NCBI GenBank assembly: GCA_009103225.1
Contig: RHPI01002262.1
Location: 284,080-348,079 of the forward strand
Length of the DNA stretch: 64,000 nucleotides
Direction: 5' to 3'
From: Chlorokybus atmophyticus
Taxonomy: Eukaryota; Plantae; Mesostigma and Chlorokybus algae
Within the stretch, counting starts at the first letter, position 1, and every line of letters starts with the position of its first letter. Below the pieces are notes generated by a model that was given only the letters and a program-made list of their open reading frames with translations, made no database searches and was not told where the DNA came from. Positions 7,315 through 47,994 of this stretch are shown piece by piece. The translations under genes were made by a program, and so were the position numbers.

Positions 7315-7648
7315 TGTAACGGAGTGCTACCTCTATAGAAGTTCCCGCCCTTATTTAGGGTTACATAAGGGTCCTAACGGGGTTAGACAGCCAATTAAGG
7401 CATATTAGGGCTATTAAAACCTAGTGTTAATGCTCTAATATAATGTTGCGATAAGTAACACTAATATCGGCAGGAGACTCATGTCTCATGCCGATATCAA
7501 CCGCATGACGGCGCTGCTAACGCAGCGACCGCCATAGCCGGAGTATCTGTTGCTCTGGCAACTGCCACGGCGGCGGCGGTAGCGTCGGCGTGGCTGATGG
7601 TGGTGTTGGGGTGAGGGATTAGAGGGAGGAGGGGTACTCCCCCTTACA
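7315..7648 (+). repeat. Putative 5' LTR (~334 bp) of a Ty3/gypsy-like element
   Basis: Begins TGTAACGGAGTG and ends ACTCCCCCTTACA (imperfect terminal inverted repeat). It is followed after 1 nt by CGGTATCGGAGCA (7650-7662), a tRNA-iMet-type PBS, and lies upstream of a gag pseudogene. The left boundary is inferred; no second LTR was found. Confidence 0.55.
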
Positions 7649-8482
7649 TCGGTATCGGAGCACGGGCGGCAAGGGGCCCGTGGGAGGTGCGGCGACAGGT
7701 AACAGGCACTGCAGGGGCGGCGGCAAGCGGCAGGCACCGCAGCGGCAGGCGGCAGCGACGGCAACTAATGGTAGTTATTATTTTATTTTCTTTTACTGCT
7801 GTGGTAACGCTGCTGCTGGTGCCTAGCCTAACCTAGCCTAGCATGGCAGATCATGCCATGCCATGCCATGCCTAACCTGCCTGTCATAGTCCAGTTTGTT
7901 ATTGGATGAAGGGAGGCGGCCATCCAGGCCCCTCCCTCAAGCATTGCATGCAAGCATACAACATAGTAATCATATACTGATTATTTTACCATATATTGTG
8001 TGCTGACCACCACGTGGATTCGTGGTGGTGTAAGGGTTTTCATCCATTTTCGATAACTCCCTTAAGGGCAGTTCGGTGACAACGATTGCCTCGTTACCGC
8101 CAATGAGCGCGGTGAGGCCGCCAGAATTTACTGAGCGGCCAATATCAAATTTCAGACTCACAACTCGATGATACCAGCCTGTAAGGTCGAGTTAACGAGA
8201 TTTTGGCACCCCGTGTGTCAATTGTAGTTATAGTTATGAGTGGAGCTGGGTTGTACAAACTAAAACTTTGAGCAGCCATCGTGAACCGTCGCGTGCATTC
8301 GCTTACGGTTTATATTAAAGTGATTGTCGAGTTAAAAGGTGTTTGGAGAGCTCTGCTTTTAGCTGTATACTCTACATAAACCCCTTGAAAACTTGACGCG
8401 ACAAAAGCACGAAGTTTTGCCACTTCATGCAGTGCACAATCTGTGTATTGTGCATTTGCTAACGGCTTATATCCTTGGGCAG

Positions 8483-15457: not shown

Positions 15458-18400
15458 TTACAGGAAGCTGAAAATGCTCTCCATCTCTTCTCTAACACCG
15501 TGCGGTTGAGGCGTTTGGTTTTGCGAGGAAACCTGCGTGCTCTCACAAGGAGGCTCTGTGCTGTTGGTAACGGCCGCCGGAAAGAGAGACCTGATCGCAG
15601 GGTAAGGGGTCAATTGGTTGAGTTGAAGTGTAATTGGTATACCATCTACACACAGCATACACACGCACACGCGCACATGGTTGCATGAGATGCATGCAAA
15701 TCCTCACAACCATAGGTTGCCAAAAGTACCTGCGGATAGGGTGGAGCGGAGGGGTTCTGCTGGGTCTCTCCTGGGACTCAGCAATAAAGTCCAGAAGCGA
15801 ACTGCGGGGAGCTCCCATTGGCAAGGGAGGACACGCATTGCCAGGTGGAGTGCCAACCAGTCTTCCGGTAATCGGTGCTGATGATGGTGCATCCCACGCT
15901 CGGTCGTGTGCCGTGATGAAGGGCTGTTGTTGCCGTGTGTCAGTGAGGCTTTGTTGCTGCATTATTGGCCGCCATGGCTGCTGCGGAAGTTGAGGTGGAA
16001 TAGGCTGCGACTGGATGGGATTACGTGGCTGAGTCACTGAACTGGTTGAACTCTGTTGTGGGTGTTGTTGCCAAGGAGGTGTTCCATAGAGCCTTGCGAC
16101 AGGTTGCGCTTGGTGCTGCGGCCGGGCAGGTGTGCCATCAACCATGCCCGCAGGACGCATGTTGGTTGCCTGGAGTGCAGCTTGTGGGTGTTGTTGAAGC
16201 CAAGGAGGTGTTCCATACAGCCGTGCGGCAGGTTGCACTTGGTGCTGTGGCCGGGCAGGTGTGCCATAAACCATGCCCGCAGGACGCATGTTGGTTTCCT
16301 GCAGTGCAGGTCTGCAACCAGGAGCCGACAGCGAAGAGAAGGAGCTGCCAGACGCCGCGAAAGAAGGCCGCGGGACTGCGCTTGTCTTGCGCTGCATCAG
16401 CTCGAGCGCGCGGTCCGCGTCCCCAGCAAGACGCGCTTCTTTGGGTGTGTAGTTGGGTGGCAAGTCTTGCAGTGCGCTCTTGCGCTTAGCCGTGAAAGCC
16501 ACACCTGCAGACGGGTGGTCAGTGGCTTCATTGGCTAACCAGCTGCAAGGGAGTGTTTTGGTCAGTAACAGCAAAGACATTGATGAAAAGGGCAGTTTGA
16601 TGGATGGCTTACGATTGAGTGCCAAGCGCTTCTCTGCCTCAGTCAAGTTGAGCCCTTGTTTGCAGCACAGGTGCTTGCAAGCACGCTTGTCTGCGAGCGG
16701 TGAGAGAGTTTAAGCAGCCACTACATTGGTAGCAGTCATCAATGAGTGACTGTGCGGTGTCGAAAAGGAAAGCATTATCTGACCTTTGCACCTGCAGTTG
16801 CATCGCTTTCCCTTGTCCACTTTGGCTGTGCCGACAGCAGGAGCGGTAGCCTCGCCTGCAAGAGTTGAAGCTAAGACTGATATTCAGAAGATGCTGCTTG
16901 CTAAGACTTCCAAGCTAGCTACCTTGTGGTCGACTTTGGGGTTCCAACCTCGCATCCGCTTGGTTATGATCGCCAGCACTGTTGTCCGCTGCAGGCAAGT
17001 CTTCATCGGAAGCATGCTCTCTACCGCTATCAGGTGTGGTGGGGACTCTGCTTGTGCATACATGACTGTTGTCATTGCTTGTGATGTGTGATATGCTAGA
17101 TTTGAAAGCCGCATTGAGTACTGATTGCGTACATGCACAACACCAATACCCAACATGTTGGCATACCCATCTGAGTGCCCGTTGTCGTTGTCACCGTTCT
17201 GCACCCCTTCAACATCTTCTCGCTTGAGACCATCGTCAACATCGCCTTCAATGAGATCAATGACGCCGTCACCGTTGCCATCACCTTCACGTCTTGGCTG
17301 GGGTTCATTGTCGTCCACACGATGATTAGGGTTGACACCAGCATTCAGCATGTCTTGGTACACGCGGCTGTAGCCCCGCCCGCCGGGTGAGCGTGCTACA
17401 AGTGTGCGCCTTGCGCTTGCATCCAACCCAACTGTGCAACGAGTGCGTGACACTGTAAACAGGTGTTCGCAGAGCAATCCGTTGCATTGTGATTGGCCAG
17501 GTCTCACCGTATCCTTCCACAATCACATTGACGACAATCTCCATGCTCTTCACATTAGGTGGCCAGGTGACCTGGAACGTCTCTTTGTAGGGGCTGGAAC
17601 ACATGTGGAGCTGGTCAGGGCTTTGAACACACTTGTAATAAACCAACATGAGCTCTAGGTGCCGCTCAACACCGCTGCTGCAGCTCTGCGCAAAGCTCAC
17701 CTCGGGAACTTTTCCAGTCTGCAAGGACCAGCGTACCATCATCACAGCACAAGAGTGTCATTGAAGTCAGAAAGTTAACATCACAGAGAAGCATGCACCA
17801 CAGCTTGCATCTGTTGCAACTTACACCATGGTCTGATGGAGAAGGATGGTGTCATCGCGCGTGTTTCCTGCAATCTATGCAACAAGCCGAGTTGATTACT
17901 TGCATGTAACCATACTCACGTGATCATCATTAGCACTGTACCAGCACGGCTTGGTGATGAACGGTGCTTTTGCCTTCTTGCAGCCTGGTGACTGTCACAG
18001 TAGTCTCCTCTGTGTCTGGCGCCAGCTGTGTTGGTGCGCTGAGCTGAACATTGACGCAAGGTGGCAAGTTTTTCAAACTCTCCTTGATCTGGTTGCCAAA
18101 GGGGTACTTGCGGCCCGTCACAACCTCAAGCCGTCTCGGGTCCGCTGCTGCCAACTTGTCAAAACTGTCGATGCCTCCCGCCACAAGAGCCTGTGAAGAT
18201 CGCCAAGTCAATGTGGTGGTGGTGAGTATCATATACTAGTACCTTGCATCATCTTATGCCTGATACTGGTTTCCGTAACTGCATGCATCATCTTATGCCT
18301 GATACTGGCCAGTGGTATTGCTCTCTGCTTGCCTTGGATGTGATGGGTCCAATGTGTTGAAGCTGCTTTAGCACATGCTGCGTGTCAGACCACATTTTCT

Positions 18401-31008: not shown

Positions 31009-34000
31009 TCACCGCAAGCCAGCCTCGTATAAACACACGCAATCGTACAACTTGCCGTTAAAGCGCGCGGCCAAACGGTTGTTCTTAATCATCGCCAACT
31101 GCAATGCAAGCGGTTCTTTATCAAATTCCGCAAGAAAAAAGCGACAAGACAACTCATCAACTACTCTGTAAACTTCTCTCTCTCACCTTGAGCGAATCAC
31201 ACGTGAAGCGGGCCTGGAAGTTGGTATGCAGTGCCCGCCCCATGCCTTCCAATACAATCTGCCGAGCGTGTCGCACAGACACAAAAACAGGTAAGTACAT
31301 GTCTTGAACAACGCCAAACCACCGAACCTTGCTGACGTATACTTGTGTTGTTGCTGGCAACACTGTCACAAGAACTGATACAACTCAGTAGCTCAAGACT
31401 AACATGCTGGAGACATTGTACGGTTACCATTAGCTGAGCGATGTGCAGGTGAACGCTGCAGTTTACAAGCTTGAGAGGGCTTTGCACCATGAATGAGGTG
31501 ATAGTAGTGGTACTCTGGTAAGTTGGGGCACGCAAGCGAGCGACAACGTGGGCAACGCTTACCAAATCAACTCCCTGAGCGGCCTCCACAAGCTGCTGGC
31601 TCACGCGTCTCAGGTCGATGCACGGGCTCCCGTGCCCGCTCTCCACCACGCTCAGCCGCCCCGTTGACGTATATTTCTGATTGCTACCGTCGTTGTTGTC
31701 ATCGTGAGTGTGCGGTTGCAAGGCCTGCTTCAGCACTGCATCGCCGGTCGTCTCCACTGCCACCGCCAAGACCTGTCATAAGAACACACGTATTGTGGCT
31801 GAGTGATTGAGGTGAAGACACCGCATTGCAAGGAGAACGGAGAATGCTAAACGTGCACGCAACCAAAGCCGCATGCACACATGCACATACATATGTGGAT
31901 ACGCGCGCACATGCAGATGCCATGATATGCACATGATGCGCGCGCGCACGTACACACGCATGCAGACAAGCATGCACGCGCGCGTGCAAGTAAGGCTCCC
32001 TGCCTGGCGGAGTTCGGCAGCGGTGATGTCATTGAGTGCGGGTTTGGTGTTGGCGACCATAAAGACATGTGCGCCGCGGCGGGCGAGCTCGCGTGCCAAT
32101 GGGAGCATCCCGAGCACCGCGTCCGCCCCGCTGTTGTCCACAAACAGCAACGCCCTGCGTGTACAGGCCGGTCGCCAATCAGCACAATTGAACACACGCA
32201 CACGCAATATGTCAAACACCATACTTCTTGAATGCCGGAGCGTCAGGTGTGCCCGACAGCAACTTTGCGCGAAAGGCCTCAAAATTGTCGATTAGCCACG
32301 GCCGCCTGAGCATCGAGCGCGACTCGCGGTATATCTCCAAAATGGTGCCGGACTTGTACAGTTCAACACAGGCTCGAGAGCCCTGTGCATGCATAAACAG
32401 GTTGAAGTCCAGACCCGTACACACTCACGCGCACGTGTACGCACACACACAAGCGCGCAGACGCGCACATGCACGCTCACGCACACATGCACGCTCACGC
32501 ACACATGCACACTCACACACACATGACATGAACATGCTGTGGAAAACCCTGCAGCATGTTTTACTGCAGTCAAACCGTACCCAGTCAAAGATGTTTCCTG
32601 CTAGGACGCCCTCAATGAGGGCCTGCAGGCGCGCGCCCTCGTCCGCAATCTCATCCAATTCCGCCAGCAGGTCGCTAAGCACCGACAGCGCCGCAGCATT
32701 CTCCCTGTCCTTGACCTACGTTTGGCACATGCATAACCAGGACTGAGCGCAAGCAAAGAGTCTGTCAAGAAGAGGATAGCAAGTGAAAGCGACTCGCATG
32801 TGCACCAGCAACAACTGAACTGCAACTGTCGTTGCCAAGCAAGCAAAGCCAAAACACAAACAGTTGAAACTGTGAGGGCGTACAACACACATGCACGCAC
32901 ATACACATGAACTTGTGCCAGTGCTCCACTTCAAGACTGACAAACAACATGCCATTTGCCCCTCCAACCTGTTTGTAGGCGTCGTGAAAGTTGAAGTCCC
33001 GTAGGCATTCCTCTCTCATCTCCAGCAGCGTGGCGAGTCCGGGGCGTCCGTAGGCTGCGGGTTCGGCGCGCAGGCGTAGGAGGTGTGTCTGGTAGGCCTG
33101 GGCAAAGGCGTTGGCGCGCGTCCTCGCCGCGCCCGTCGTGGCACCGCCCTCGCTCTCCACAGCCTTCTCGATCAGGTTCGGCATGTGCTCTAGCAGAACG
33201 CTGATCCAGTACTCGCGCTCGTCCTTGTCCTCGGCCAGATCCACCGTGTTCGGCTCATAACCCTTCACGCATACACACACTCCATCACACACGCGTATGC
33301 ATGCATGTACACACATATGCATGCACACGTGCACATGCTTGCGCGCATAGGCAAGGCCACAGATAGTGACATACAGTCAAGCAACTTCAATGTGCATGCA
33401 TGCCTGAGGATCGGTGAGGAGTGGGAATGGCCCGAAGCTCGGCACGAGGTGGAGGACGCCAACACTCATGCCGGGCGGGACGGGAATGTTGTTAATGTTA
33501 GGGATGGGCGCGACGGGGTGAAGCGGGGGGAGTGCGGCGGCAACATCACCTTTAGGAGACTGCATGCGTGAAGAAGTACATCAAGACCTTGGTTGTAGCA
33601 GCATGATGTATGTTTAACCAACAAAGCCACATTGTCTCCCACACAAGCAGAGAGGGATTGCACACACACATGCGCGTGCACACAGGCATTCTTTTGACCC
33701 ACCGTGACTGCTTTAGCCTGAGGTTGCTTTGCGTGCTGGTCATTGAGCCCGCCTTGAACAAACTTTTCCACCCACGAGACCTTCTGCGCGGCGGCCGCAG
33801 CCGATACATTAACGGGCGGCGTGCCCACGTTCTCCGCTTCGCTCACGCCCACCCCATCGACGAGCGGGAATCGTTCGATGAGTTGCGCGGATGACGTGTG
33901 CACGAGCTCAGACGTGACATCGTCCTCGTAGGCAAGGAACGCCCCCAAAGCGCCCAGGAAGCCCTCGTGACGCAGGAACGTCGCCTTCATCGTGGACTTG

Positions 34001-36996
34001 GACCAGAAGTTGATGGCAAAGTTGATCGTCTGCATCGTGTACGAGTGGCCGCGGATGAAAAAACCGCCAAAGAAGATGCGCTTGAGGCCGTGCTGAGTCG
34101 CCACCAAGTACGCCAACTACGGGACAGGACAACATGTGCGTGTGCGTGCATGTATGCGTGTGCGTGTGCGTGTGCATGTGCTTGTGCGTGTGTCAGTTCA
34201 TGTTGGTGCGTACGTGGGCAATGTTGTATGATATCATGCGCAGGAGGCTGAGCGCCATGTCTGCAGGGTTGCAGTCCGCCAGCTCCTTGCCTTCAGCTGC
34301 CACCTGCATGGTGACCAACTTAGCAGCAAGGCGCACGCGAGCACACACACACACATGCACACACAAGCTCGCACCCACCAACCCACATAGGCACACGCAC
34401 GCACGCACAGTGTGTCTGTGTGGTATGGATGACATGCAGGTGTCATTGGTCCCAACAAAATGCACCTTGCCAAAGCTGGAGGCGATAGTGTCGGCGGACA
34501 GCCCCACTTTGGCGTAGTCCACACCGCCGTAGATGTCTCCCACAAGCATGTCCACCTACTACAGCTTGAGACAGTCAGCATTTCCTCCTGCTGAAAGTCA
34601 TCAGTGACGCACAGCACAACAATGCAAATACACACTCAACAACCAGCATTGTCGTACAGGTATACCGTGGCGTTGTTGCCTTTGGCGCTAAGCTCCAGCA
34701 TCTCATCAAAGCTGGTTGCAGTACAGACTCTGAGCCATGCATGCAGGCACACTCACAAAATGTTGGGATGTAATGACTGCATGCTTGAGCACCTTTGGCA
34801 CTTGGTCAGGAGGCGGCACAAGCCCCAAAAGGTCCCACCGCCGAGATTCGTGCCACTCACGCGCGCAAAATCCCCCTCACCATCAACCTGCACAAAGAAG
34901 TGAGCAAGTGATAAAGGGAGTAAGAGAGAGTGAGAGGCGTGCGAATGTGTGTGTGCGCGCGCGTTTGTGTTGCTGAAGAACAGCATGTGCGTGAAAGCAA
35001 AGAGAAGACGTGCCTTGACCATGCTCACGCCCGAGCCGATGTTCACCAGCAAGTAAGGGAACAGCTGTCCGTGCAGCCGAACAAACTGGATATGGACAAA
35101 CATACACAAGAATGTTGGTTTATGGCGCAAGTGACCCACTGCCCTCTGCATCACCACAACTTCTAACAAACCTCTTTCTCGCCGTTGCTGAACTGAAACG
35201 CCTCATCTTCAATTGCCTGCGTGTCAAGGATGCAGCACTCATTACACGAGGTGAGACAACAACACCATCAACTTACTTCGCCGAGAGCCACAAACACAAA
35301 TGGTGAACAACGGCCTACCCGTAAGAGGAAATTGGCACCCGCAACGAGGCTCGCCATCTCGTCCTCTTTTGAGAGCGTAAGCCCAAGCCTCCGCTTGAAA
35401 GCCTTCAAACGCAAACCACCACTCAACAAATTATTCATCACGCGCATGCGCTCACACACACGCACACACTGCCATACCTCAGCAAACCTGTATGACCCGC
35501 CTCCGGTCGCCTGGAGCACAAGGTGCAGTACACATCAGAAGTTGTGCTATGATGGTCACTTCTTTATAAGGTTGTTGTGCAATGGCTCGTGAGGACGCTT
35601 ACCTTCACTGTGGCAGTGCCGGCCGCAGCAACGGAGTCATTGAGCTTCGCCGCACTGCATGGATACAGGCACAAGAACTGAGAGGAGGCTTACACAAACA
35701 TGCCGTAGCACAACAACAACAATTTAACATAGCAACTTGGCAATGACCGATCTCGGGTGACGACCATCGGGGGACCGTTAAACAGCGTTCATGATTAAGT
35801 AAAACTGTTATCCTACAAGGCCAGCTGGCTAGCTGTGTTGTCCCGCATGCACGCACACACGCAAGCACGTGCCCACACGCCGTGTGTACCCACGCAGGCA
35901 CGCTTGCCTGCACACATGTGCACATGCATCCCACACGCACAGCCACGTGTGCATGTGCATAGGTGCATGCACGCTCACATGCATGGCTGACAATCATGCC
36001 CACCCTCTTCCAAGCGCCCTCTTACTTGAGCTGGTGTACGTGCAGCCGCCGGGCTTCAATGAAGTCCAGGCACTCCTCCAGTTTGCTCGTCTCAAACTTG
36101 GCAAAATGCAGCCTCCCTCCACCCACCCCACCATCACCCTGCTAGTTGTGAATACGCAAGAGTTACCCAACTACACACAGACACATACATATACACGCAC
36201 GCACGCGCATGACTGCATGCATGACCGCGCACGTGCACGCACGCACACACATTGCATGCATGACTCCATGCCATACCCACCTCTGTGGGTGCGAAGTACA
36301 CCAGCTTGATTAGCGAGCCGCCGATGTCGACAGCGAAGTGGGCGGACAGCGAGGCCGGCGGCTGGTTTGGCAGCAGAATCGGTGGTGTGGAGACGCGTGC
36401 GGGAGCAAGCATGGGTAAACCTGCCGATGTCAATGCACACAAGCATTGGATGCATGCAGTGTGTTGCTGCTGATCAAGGTAGATTAAGGTAGAGGTAAGG
36501 CTAGGGTTAGGGTTTCGGCTCATCATTATTCATGCACGTAGTCAGTGTGTGCAGTACTCGCATTGCAACATCACTTGAAGTGTTGCTCTTGTTGTCATGA
36601 TGTTTTGCATTGCACACCAGGCAGGATGTTTGCATGACGTATGCGCATCAACAATCAAGTAGCGGTGCTACGGACTGTGTATGTGTCTCTTTCTATTCTT
36701 ATATGTCTGAGATTGCTGCATGGCTAGCAGGTGGATGCATGGACTTACTTACTCTATGAAGCTCGTTTGACTCGAGTGGCTCAAGCGAAGAACATGGCAA
36801 CAGCAGCATGGGGTGTACCTTCATTGGGTGACTCTGGGCTTGTCGTCGTTGCGGTCGTCGCCGTCGCCGTCGCCGTCGTGGCCGTCGTCGCCGTCCGGAC
36901 GCCGTCTTCCTGGTCGTCCGCCCTCTTCTCCCCGTCCTCCGGCTGTATAGCCGCCCCAGAGAGGTCCAAGCGACCGCGGCTGCCGGACCGCTTCAT
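31009..36996 (-). CDS. PANK2: Plant-type pantothenate kinase 2: type II PanK fused to DUF89 (damage-control phosphatase) domain, ~20 exons
   Basis: [15 protein letters not shown]; [15 protein letters not shown]; ATGGGSYRF; [14 protein letters not shown]|VDG...[14 protein letters not shown]; [11 protein letters not shown]; [18 protein letters not shown]89 part: [47 protein letters not shown]. Confidence 0.95.
34888..35013 (-). other. GC-AG intron in PANK2 (126 nt)
   Basis: AAG|GCACGT joins [10 protein letters not shown] to VDGEG. Confidence 0.85.
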
Positions 36997-37651
36997 GGGG
37001 GCAGGGGGACGCCGCCACCGGACGGTGTGGGCGAGGAGGACGACAAGGCAGTGGAATTGGAATATGCGGGTACGGTTATACGAACGAGCATGCAAGTTGC
37101 ATAGTGCAACATTAGTTGTGACCTAGCCATGGTAGCTTACTACCGATAGATGATTATGAAACGGGTTGGGTTGTAATCAAACTAAAGGTATTTGGGTCTT
37201 CACAACAGCATCATTGATGCATTAATGTTTGTGATCGTAATAGCACAAGATTAAAATTTAAAAATCTTTGCAAAAGTGAGTGTGGGTTGTGATATGTGTG
37301 TCATTAATGGTTTAATCTTTAAAATGACCACAAAAATAAAGGCTCTTCGTGCGGGCTTCTTGAAATGTTCAAATGTAGGATGTGCCAGGTGAGCATGTAG
37401 TAAAAACCCTTCAATAAAGGTTGACCCATTGCCAGTTGATATGATTGTGATGATCGATTATTAAATGAGCATATAGTGCCGGAAGTGCTAAAAATCTATG
37501 CAAAGCAACCATTAGGCAATGCAGACTCCTATTTTTTTGCTAAACTACTACGCATATGAACATTGCTATAATGTGGGCCGTCCATGATAAATCTGTAACT
37601 TGTATATGACAACAGTGTGCTACTAGTAGCATGCGCATGCCAGTATTATAT

Positions 37652-38256
37652 TGTCACAGCCCACTCGACCACAAAAGACTTGGTGCTTTTATGGTCGATT
37701 TGTGGTAATATAATGTGCCTTCCCGTTACATTCATAGTAATTACCACAAATCGACCATAAAAGCGCCAAGCCTTTTGTGGTCGAGTGGGCTGTGACATTG
37801 GTATCGGAGCTTGAGACCCGGGTTCGATTCCTGCCTTGCATACGAATTCCGCGGTCGTTGTTTCTCGATCCAATAACATCCAATAACATCGTAAATGGTC
37901 ACTTTATAAGTGCCATCATCGATGGGTCGCGACTTGCATAATGGCAGTCGCGCCGAACTGACCAGTTTAGTCGGCGCGGCAGGGCGCGACCTGCCTATCG
38001 CGGCGACGCGACCTGTGGGGCCGGCAGCGGCACGCTATGCGCGCGCTGACCGGTATGGGCCTAAATTGGCCGGTCCTTGGCTGTGGGGCCGGTGACCGAC
38101 CCTAACAAACCCCTTAGGTAATTCCCCAGCTGAGCGGGCAGCTGCCGAGGACGTCAGCGTTCTTAAATGGGGGGGAATGTAACGGGAAGGCACATTAAAC
38201 GACCACAAATCGACCATAAAAGCACCAAGTCTTTTGTGGTCGAGTGGGCTGTGACA
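37652..38256 (+). mobile_element. Non-autonomous miniature LTR retroelement (TRIM) with an extra inverted LTR
   Basis: Inverted full LTR 37652-37730; truncated direct LTR 37740-37797 ending GGGCTGTGACA; PBS TGGTATCGGAGC 37799-37810; ~370-bp non-coding interior; PPT GGGGGGGAA 38169-38177; 3' LTR 38178-38256 (TGTAACGG...GTGACA, 79 bp); TATAT on both flanks (37647-37651, 38257-38261). Confidence 0.88.
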
Positions 38257-38261
38257 TATAT

Positions 38262-38680
38262 AAAGTTTCTGAGGATCAATGTTATGCGCTTTTCGAAAAA
38301 CATATATGTGTACATATACATATATATATACACATAAACATGTGTATATATATGCATGCAAATGCCATGACTATATATATATACACATATAAATATATAT
38401 ATATACCTTTGTAAACACATATATACATAAGCACACATATATATACATAACACATATAAGTTGCGATAAAGCAAAGTCCAAGAGTGGTTGCAATGCAAAT
38501 ACAACCATAAATACCAACAAGTCAACAACAAGCAAACAATTTTGGTGGGGGCTAAAACAGAGTTCAACGCTAGGGCTGCAACTGGCCCTACATATATGTA
38601 TGCATATATATGGTTTTTAAACGGCGCATAACATATTTATGTGTACACTACATATATATGTGTACATATCTCAAAAATAT
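38262..38680. repeat. Degenerate (TA)/(CA) low-complexity tract
   Basis: Long runs such as atatacatatatatatatacacat and tatatatatatacacatataaatatatat. Confidence 0.8.

Positions 38681-41097: not shown

Positions 41098-47994
<6,897 letters not shown>

What the first reader, a model, noticed from the sequence alone, without database searches (positions are those of the whole stretch)
37652..38256. Miniature LTR retroelement with U5 ends on both sides and a TSD around the whole fold-back unit
Seen: a complete 79-bp LTR in reverse orientation (37652-37730), a 9-nt spacer, then a 5'-truncated forward LTR, PBS, structured interior, PPT and a full 3' LTR. The inverted copy carries gcaccaagtc like the 3' LTR, while the truncated forward copy has gcgccaagcc. 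Both termini read TGTCACAGCCC inward, and TATAT flanks both ends. Established: LTR integrases process TG...CA ends and make 4-6-bp TSDs; normal TRIMs have two direct LTRs. Inference: a fold-back or template-switch cDNA with two U5 att ends was integrated as one unit, giving an LTR element that looks like a TIR element (MITE-like). If multicopy, this is an unusual non-autonomous element class. The alternative is a solo LTR inserted next to a TRIM.
Basis: partly seen in the sequence, partly recalled or inferred. Interest (0 to 1): 0.8.

Follow-up and report, generated by a model that had tools for sequence, protein, structure and literature searches.

The report
Fold-back miniature LTR retrotransposon insertion
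A 605-base non-coding LTR retrotransposon in the alga Chlorokybus has its left repeat replaced by a hairpin of two facing repeat copies, most likely because a mis-made DNA copy that folded back on itself was still inserted as one piece; this is a rare natural by-product, not shown to be a new class of mobile element.

Summary
There is a full 79-bp LTR in reverse orientation (37652-37730), a 9-nt junction, and a 5'-truncated direct LTR (37740-37797). A PBS, a 354-bp interior, a G-rich PPT and a full 3' LTR (38178-38256) follow. Both termini read TGTCACAGCCC inward, and TATAT flanks both ends.

The left 146 nt form one hairpin. Its apex is a 5-bp mini-hairpin (AATGT/ACATT) native to the start of U3. 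A model in which nascent minus-strand DNA primes on itself there and copies itself back predicts 139 of 141 bases, with 5 extra bases unexplained.

My best reading (0.6) is an aberrant snap-back cDNA of a TRIM, integrated once through two U5 ends. The solo-LTR alternative fails, because the inverted copy has no TSD of its own. A fold-back at DNA level from the truncated copy is impossible, because the inverted copy is the more complete one.

The MITE-like class claim is untested and mechanistically unlikely. Any RNA made from the retained promoter region would regenerate ordinary direct LTRs.

I could not test copy number, family consensus or empty sites.

The scan's first readers noted other fold-back TRIMs with TSDs elsewhere in this genome. 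None of those notes is verified.

The parts
37647..37651 (.). [quoted passage not shown]
   Evidence: an exact 5-nt match with 38257-38261; 4, 6 and 7 nt do not match.
37652..37730 (-). Complete 79-bp LTR in reverse orientation. Its U5 terminus (TGTCACAGCCC) forms the left end of the unit.
   Evidence: (I1), 4 and 21: 96% identical to the 3' LTR over 79 nt. The three differences cluster at LTR positions 22-25.
37712..37732 (+). Apex of the hairpin: AATGT (37712-37716), an 11-nt loop, then ACATT (37728-37732). This is the native mini-hairpin formed by the last two PPT bases plus U3 positions 1-18, and it is the proposed self-priming site.
   Evidence: predicted in the DNA folds of both 37652-37733 and 37652-37797.
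37731..37739 (+). Junction, TTCATAGTA. TT(C) matches the complement of the PPT end (GAA). C and AGTA are the 5 bases that the snap-back model does not account for.
37740..37797 (+). 5'-truncated direct LTR (LTR positions about 22-79). It pairs with 37652-37709 as a 58-bp stem and carries an A-box-like TGGTCGAGTGG at 37778-37788.
   Evidence: (I2: 97%; D4: 96% to the 3' LTR).
37799..37810 (+). Primer-binding site, TGGTATCGGAGC, one base after the LTR's CA end.
   Evidence: The same 11-mer, GGTATCGGAGC, follows another TTACA end at 7649-7661.
37811..38164 (+). Non-coding, GC-rich interior. It includes a B-box-like GGTTCGATTCC at 37821-37831.
   Evidence: the motif is unique in the window, with 0 expected; the RNA fold of 37798-38177 has z = -3.0; no other copy in the window.
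38165..38177 (+). Polypurine tract, AAATGGGGGGGAA, abutting the TG of the 3' LTR.
38178..38256 (+). Complete 79-bp 3' LTR (TG...CA). Its U5 terminus forms the right end of the unit.
38257..38261 (.). [quoted passage not shown]

Best explanation
This is a single insertion of an aberrant cDNA of a TRIM, a miniature non-coding LTR retrotransposon with 79-bp LTRs, a tRNA-iMet-type PBS and a 5-bp TSD, so probably mobilised by a Copia-type element.

Proposed steps, all inferred:
1. During reverse transcription the minus-strand DNA had just finished copying U3 and 2-3 bases of the PPT.
2. Its 3' end (ACATT) snapped back onto AATGT 11 nt upstream and primed on itself.
3. It copied itself back to its own 5' end (U5) and on into the tRNA primer.
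4. This made a covalently attached plus-strand strong-stop equivalent: a truncated LTR plus PBS.
5. That end then transferred to a complete minus strand and was extended through the interior, PPT and LTR.

The finished duplex had a U5 terminus at both ends. The normal U3 end (TGTAAC) and U5 end (TGTCAC) differ at one of six bases, so integrase could take the pair and insert the unit with one 5-bp duplication.

Shown here: the anatomy, the hairpin, the TSD, and the fit of the prediction. Inferred: the order of reverse-transcription steps, the use of a second minus strand, and the integrase step. The fold-back is a dead-end by-product, not a heritable design.
For: 1. Retroelement hallmarks sit in exact register: TG...CA LTRs, a PBS one base after CA, and a purine tract abutting TG.
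2. Both outer termini are intact U5 ends, flanked by an exact 5-bp repeat with chance about 0.001-0.002.
3. The left 146 nt fold as one hairpin (-69 kcal/mol, z = -19.7). Its apex is the 5-bp/11-nt-loop mini-hairpin that the isolated minus-strand-sense LTR also forms.
4. The self-primed product predicted from 37652-37732 aligns with the observed 146 nt. The only differences are two small insertions (C and AGTA) and two transitions.
5. The inverted copy is complete and the direct copy is truncated, so copying can only have run from inverted to direct. This is the direction snap-back predicts.
6. The inverted and truncated copies share TT where the 3' LTR has CG. That is expected if the hairpin arms come from one strand and the 3' LTR from a co-packaged second template.
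7. Precedents:
   - Complex LTR elements with a TSD around the whole unit have been ascribed to template switching in reverse transcription (PMC1950507).
   - HIV-1 integrase in vitro preferentially uses pairs of U5 ends and makes 5-bp duplications (PMC8742673).
   - An integrated MoMLV provirus with inverted LTRs that used two U3 ends is on record. Only the title was seen, in a reference list; the paper is not held.
Against: - There is one locus only. No other family copy is in the window, so there is no consensus to polarise the five variable sites and no TSD spectrum.
- The duplicated 5-mer is TATAT next to a TA-rich microsatellite. A strong TA target preference would weaken the TSD argument.
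- The hairpin arms differ at two positions where the inverted copy agrees with the 3' LTR. Simple self-copying does not predict this; it needs later mutation, polymerase error or conversion.
- Five junction bases are unexplained.
- The pathway needs a second minus strand for plus-strand transfer, which is assumed.
Confidence: 0.6

Rival explanations
1. There were two events at one hot spot, followed by a deletion. A second copy of the TRIM inserted head-to-head at or beside the left end of a normal copy, re-using the TATAT site. The unstable palindrome centre was then deleted by slippage between the two ACATT motifs. This left the outer LTR of the inverted copy joined to a truncated 5' LTR.
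For: Long perfect palindromes are known to suffer central deletions (general knowledge). ACATT occurs at both would-be breakpoints. The target is TA-rich, with 24 TATAT in the 500 nt to the right. The arms differ at two sites, as independent copies might.
Against: This needs three rare events. The left breakpoint would have to fall within 3 nt of the LTR/PPT boundary out of about 460 possible positions. Without exact site re-use, the flank match is about 0.2%. TATAT occurs only twice in the 500 nt to the left. The junction is not a clean slippage product either.
Confidence: 0.2
2. This is a heritable fold-back or TIR-like family. Under it, the 605-bp unit with inverted U5 ends is the transposing form of a multicopy MITE-like non-autonomous class.
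For: First-reader notes elsewhere in this genome describe other fold-back TRIMs with TGT...ACA ends and 5-bp TSDs (unverified, and apparently with different architectures).
Against: No second copy is in 64 kb. By standard LTR replication, an RNA starting in the truncated LTR would not contain the inverted LTR, and U3 would be rebuilt from the 3' LTR, so progeny would be ordinary. The other notes describe U3/U3 or LTR-PBS-inward forms, which suggests independent accidents and not one propagating design.
Confidence: 0.08
3. This is a non-autonomous cut-and-paste DNA transposon of the integrase-related Ginger type, which has TGT...ACA terminal inverted repeats and short TSDs. Its LTR-like features would then be coincidental.
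For: It has 82-nt terminal inverted repeats starting TGT and ending ACA, and a 5-bp duplication. The resemblance to Ginger is recalled from memory only.
Against: A third, direct copy of the repeat is followed at once by a PBS, and a purine tract abuts the right repeat. The same PBS 11-mer follows another LTR-like end in the window. Ordinary TRIMs with this layout are reported elsewhere in this genome.
Confidence: 0.03
4. The structure is an assembly or sequencing artefact, for example a chimeric palindromic read, or a chance resemblance.
For: Fold-back chimeras do occur in long-read data (general knowledge). No reads were available to check.
Against: The arms are 97% and not 100% alike. The loop carries the U3 start. 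The unit has exact integrase-type ends and a TSD. A read artefact would not produce these together.
Confidence: 0.04

Closest known systems
TRIM / TRIMp3 (Helenus-type) non-autonomous LTR retrotransposons (Kojima 2024, PMC10886601)
   Same: It is tiny and non-coding. It has short LTRs with TG...CA ends, a PBS, a PPT and a 5-bp TSD, as reported for plant and fungal Helenus. It carries A-box-like and B-box-like motifs.
   Different: Helenus has two direct LTRs with the tRNA-like sequence inside the LTR. Here the 5' LTR is replaced by an inverted full copy plus a truncated direct copy, and the two boxes lie on either side of the LTR end and PBS. No Rfam tRNA match and no ARAGORN call were found.
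Complex LTR retrotransposons made by template switching, with a TSD around the whole unit (Sabot and Schulman 2007, PMC1950507)
   Same: An abnormal reverse-transcription product with an extra LTR was integrated once. This is recognised by a 5-bp TSD around the complex and similar outer LTRs.
   Different: Those have three direct LTRs and two interiors. This one has an inverted extra LTR, and U5 at both ends.
Integrated MoMLV provirus with LTRs in inverted orientation, using two U3 sequences (Colicelli and Goff 1988, J Virol 62:633)
   Same: It is a natural integration of a retroelement DNA whose two ends are the same LTR terminus in inverted orientation. Only the title was seen.
   Different: U3/U3 in a retrovirus, against U5/U5 in an algal TRIM. 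The paper could not be read here, so its details rest on the title and on memory.
Self-priming (snap-back) of retroviral minus-strand DNA at hairpins, as studied for HIV-1 strong-stop DNA
   Same: A 3'-terminal hairpin in nascent minus-strand DNA primes copying of the strand itself (general knowledge; papers on TAR/cTAR are listed).
   Different: The retroviral case involves the R-region hairpin of strong-stop DNA and gives dead-end products in vitro. Here the hairpin lies at the U3/PPT border and the product appears to have been completed and integrated.

Membership tests
LTR retrotransposon, TRIM type | Terminal repeats beginning TG and ending CA | tested here: met
   The 79-bp LTR runs from TG at 38178 to CA at 38256. 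The same unit is inverted at 37652-37730.
LTR retrotransposon, TRIM type | Two LTRs in direct orientation at the two ends | tested here: not met
   The left terminus is an inverted LTR. The direct 5' copy is internal and lacks about 13-22 nt. The unit is therefore a derivative of a TRIM, not a canonical one.
LTR retrotransposon, TRIM type | PBS complementary to a tRNA 3' end, next to the 5' LTR | tested here: inconclusive
   TGGTATCGGAGC lies one base after CA. The same 11-mer follows another LTR-like end at 7649-7661. The 11/12 match to the plant tRNA-iMet PBS is from memory. No tRNA gene in the window allows a test of complementarity.
LTR retrotransposon, TRIM type | Polypurine tract abutting the 3' LTR | tested here: met
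   GGGGGGGAA ends at 38177, directly before the TG.
LTR retrotransposon, TRIM type | 4-6-bp target-site duplication | tested here: met
   TATAT on both sides, exactly 5 nt, with chance about 0.001-0.002. Caveat: the target is TA-rich.
LTR retrotransposon, TRIM type | No coding capacity, total length under about 1 kb | tested here: met
   605 bp. Only spurious ORFs of 77-134 aa overlap it, and none is in the protein collection.
LTR retrotransposon, TRIM type | Multicopy family | not testable with these tools
   No other copy in the window.
MITE / TIR DNA transposon (including Ginger-type) | Terminal inverted repeats and a TSD, with no retroelement signals inside | tested here: not met
   TIR-like arms and a TSD are present. 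However, a PBS and a PPT sit in exact register with a third, direct repeat copy.
TRIMp3 / Helenus | tRNA-derived sequence recognisable in the LTR | tested here: inconclusive
   The A-box-like and B-box-like motifs are present, and the B-box motif is unique in the window. There is no tRNA hit from ARAGORN, nor from Rfam at E up to 10.

The most novel reading that the evidence does not exclude
Snap-back cDNAs of tiny, hairpin-rich TRIMs are completed and integrated repeatedly in Chlorokybus. This would give a recurrent population of fold-back LTR elements (U5/U5, U3/U3 and LTR-PBS-inward forms) that mimic TIR transposons and supply ready-made hairpin RNA precursors. This locus would be one documented member of a previously undescribed outcome of LTR retrotransposition.
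Probability: 0.2. Interest if true: 0.65.

Novelty: new variant of a known kind. Interest (0 to 1): 0.42.

Why it matters
If the reading is right, this locus is a natural fossil of a reverse-transcription accident. A self-primed minus strand was nevertheless finished and inserted through two U5 ends.

That would show three things. First, Copia-type integrases in a basal streptophyte accept symmetric ends in vivo. Second, very short LTRs with built-in hairpins are prone to snap-back. Third, LTR elements can generate TIR-like structures that annotation pipelines would misfile as MITEs or miRNA-like hairpins; Rfam miRNA models already match this hairpin below threshold.

As a single copy it is a curiosity. 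It would matter more if the other fold-back TRIMs noted in this genome prove real.

Tried and rejected
- Other copies in the window: blastn of the unit, the LTR and the interior found only the three LTR copies themselves. A window-wide search for long direct repeats found nothing relevant.
- Reaching the rest of the genome or other strains:
  - Exact look-up of 10 ORFs around and inside the element found none in the collection.
  - Two metagenome scans, with an LTR 21-mer and a degenerate 32-mer, were blank.
No empty-site or copy survey was therefore possible.
  - The search of earlier findings by sequence was blank.
- Solo LTR beside a TRIM: rejected, because the inverted copy has no TSD of its own and no stump of the forward LTR lies to its left.
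- DNA-level fold-back duplication from the truncated copy: rejected, because the inverted copy contains U3 bases that the truncated copy lacks.
- Transib-like reading from the CACAG motif: rejected by reading, because the 5-mers that would then flank the ends (ATTGT and ACATA) differ.
- Templated origin of the junction filler: no convincing nearby source was found for CATAGTA.
- tRNA identity of the LTR/PBS region: no ARAGORN or Rfam tRNA hit. The miRNA-family hits are generic long-hairpin matches far below gathering scores.
- Literature: no paper in the library combined 'inverted LTR', 'retrotransposon' and 'target site duplication'. The rice preprint on abnormal LTR elements does not mention inverted forms.

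Full report
**Setting.** The window is eukaryotic: about 50% GC, short exon-like ORFs and no tRNA genes. The element lies between two genes.
- On one side is the 5' end of a minus-strand pantothenate-kinase gene. It matches Pfam Fumble, and profile positions 1-23 fall in the ORF at 36137-36526.
- On the other side is the 3' end of a minus-strand hybrid histidine-kinase gene, with Response_reg at 41341-41583 and HATPase_c at 43651-43890.
- The kinase exon is 98% identical to an 835-aa protein that its source names Chlorokybus atmophyticus, JGI Chlat1 Chrsp22S03498. This agrees with earlier scan notes that call this genome Chlorokybus.
- None of the DNA was taken for human.

**Observation.**
- The 3' LTR is 79 bp (38178-38256, TG...CA). 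The purine tract GGGGGGGAA directly precedes it.
- The same 79 bp lie inverted at 37652-37730, 96% identical. The match runs 3 nt further (TTC against GAA), into what would be the PPT end.
- After TTCATAGTA comes a direct copy that lacks the first 13-22 nt (37740-37797). One T follows, then TGGTATCGGAGC.
- Both outer termini read TGTCACAGCCC inward.
- TATAT flanks both ends, and the match is exactly 5 nt.
- A 5-mer match at this spacing occurs at 0.15% of positions window-wide and 0.08% locally. Random flank-to-flank pairs match at 0.22%.
- The caveat is that the right flank is a TA/CA microsatellite zone, with 24 TATAT in 500 nt against 2 on the left.

**It is a retroelement, not a TIR transposon.** The PBS and PPT sit in exact register with the ends of the direct repeat copies. 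The PBS 11-mer GGTATCGGAGC recurs one mismatch away, right after another TTACA end at 7640-7661. The interior is non-coding. A 5-bp TSD and an iMet-type PBS fit a Copia-dependent TRIM, and Kojima reports 5-bp TSDs for plant and fungal Helenus TRIMs. The tRNA assignment of the PBS rests on my memory of the plant initiator tRNA and could not be tested here. The A-box-like and B-box-like motifs are present, and the B-box-like motif is unique in the window. They are the subject of another note (s1-189403). Neither ARAGORN nor Rfam sees a tRNA there.

**The hairpin.** The left 146 nt fold as one hairpin: -69 kcal/mol against -14 for shuffles, z = -19.7.
- The stem is the 58-bp pairing of the inverted and truncated copies.
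- The apex is a 5-bp stem (AATGT 37712-16, ACATT 37728-32) with an 11-nt loop.
- That mini-hairpin is not created by the rearrangement. It belongs to every PPT/U3 junction of this LTR, being the last two PPT bases plus U3 positions 1-18. The isolated 82-nt minus-strand-sense sequence forms it as well.

**Snap-back test.** I asked what a minus strand would produce if it ended at ACATT, primed on AATGT and copied itself to its 5' end. The predicted 141 nt align with the observed 146 nt over their whole length. The only differences are two small insertions (C, then AGTA) and two transitions.
- Continuing into the tRNA primer would add the PBS, which is what follows.
- The direction of copying is constrained. 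The inverted copy has the U3 start that the direct copy lacks, so the direct copy can derive from the inverted one but not the reverse.
- This excludes a chromosomal fold-back duplication seeded from the truncated LTR.

**Completion and integration (inferred).**
- The snap-back strand ends in a PBS and can make the plus-strand transfer onto a full minus strand, most simply one made from the co-packaged second RNA.
- Extension in both directions gives the observed duplex, with U5 at both ends.
- An alternative order gives the same product. Here a nearly finished minus strand leaves the plus-strand strong-stop template about 22 nt early and copies the 5' end of a minus strand.
- The variant pattern does not decide between the two orders. 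The hairpin arms share TT where the 3' LTR has CG, which favours the first order. The inverted copy and the 3' LTR share A and T where the truncated copy has G and C, which favours the second order or later mutation.
- The stretch between ACATT and ACCAC differs in all three copies: AAACG, ATATT and CATAGTAATT. I cannot explain this without a family consensus.
- Use of two U5 ends by integrase is plausible. The normal termini TGTAAC and TGTCAC differ at one base.
- HIV-1 integrase in vitro preferred U5/U5 pairs and made 5-bp duplications (PMC8742673).
- A MoMLV provirus integrated through two U3 ends is on record. I saw only its title, and the paper is not held.
- Sabot and Schulman used the same logic for three-LTR complexes made by template switching, namely a TSD around the whole complex (PMC1950507).

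**Rivals.**
- *Solo LTR next to a TRIM.* This fails. The inverted LTR has no TSD of its own (TATAT against TTCAT), and there is no stump of the forward LTR to its left.
- *Two head-to-head insertions plus a central deletion.* This remains possible, at about 0.2. It needs site re-use or a 0.2% coincidence. It also needs a breakpoint within 3 nt of the LTR/PPT border.
- *A heritable MITE-like class.* This is unlikely, at about 0.08, because an RNA made from the retained part would rebuild ordinary LTRs.
- *A Ginger-type DNA transposon, or an artefact.* Both are minor.

**What could not be done.** The window has no other copy.

**Earlier notes of this scan.** First-reader notes list other fold-back LTR elements or TRIMs with TSDs on other pieces of this genome: s1-078901, s1-171998, s1-183834, s1-079376 and s1-174242. 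None carries a follow-up, and I could not see their sequences. They are leads for a recurrent phenomenon, not support.

**Verdict.** It is best read as a one-off integrated snap-back cDNA of a TRIM with U5/U5 ends. That makes it a new variant of a known kind, an aberrant reverse-transcription product integrated as one unit. It is of moderate interest, which would rise if the architecture proves recurrent in Chlorokybus.

Noticed in passing
window 7316-7661: A second LTR-like end. A stretch starts TGTAACGG (as this TRIM's LTR does), ends CCTTACA at 7648, and is followed by CGGTATCGGAGC, the same PBS with one mismatch. No matching 3' LTR was found within 12 kb, so it is probably a truncated or old element of a related lineage.
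   Followed up: partly
window 37654-37795: Rfam miRNA precursor models (MIR6224, MIR8562 and others) match the 58-bp LTR hairpin at E as low as 1e-12, but far below their gathering scores. These are generic long-hairpin matches. They show how such fold-back LTRs could be mis-annotated, or be processed by Dicer if transcribed.
   Followed up: partly
window 38290-38680: An AT-rich zone of imperfect TA/CA microsatellite directly right of the insertion, with many overlapping direct and inverted repeats. The window's GC falls to 0.415 there.
   Followed up: no
window 37778-37831: An A-box-like TGGTCGAGTGG lies in the LTR end and a B-box-like GGTTCGATTCC lies 10 nt after the PBS, with the PBS between them. 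This is the layout other notes call a split tRNA-type Pol III promoter. A TTTT run sits 2 nt upstream of the A-box-like motif. No tRNA model matches.
   Followed up: partly
window 16054-16309: Two tandem copies of a 127-129-nt unit, 89% identical, inside overlapping long ORFs.
   Followed up: no
window 32765-36526 (-) and 41338-43890 (-): The neighbouring genes are a multi-exon pantothenate kinase (Fumble domain; P0001, 835 aa, Chlorokybus atmophyticus Chrsp22S03498) and a hybrid histidine kinase with receiver domains. The element lies about 1.1 kb upstream of the kinase's first coding exon.
   Followed up: partly
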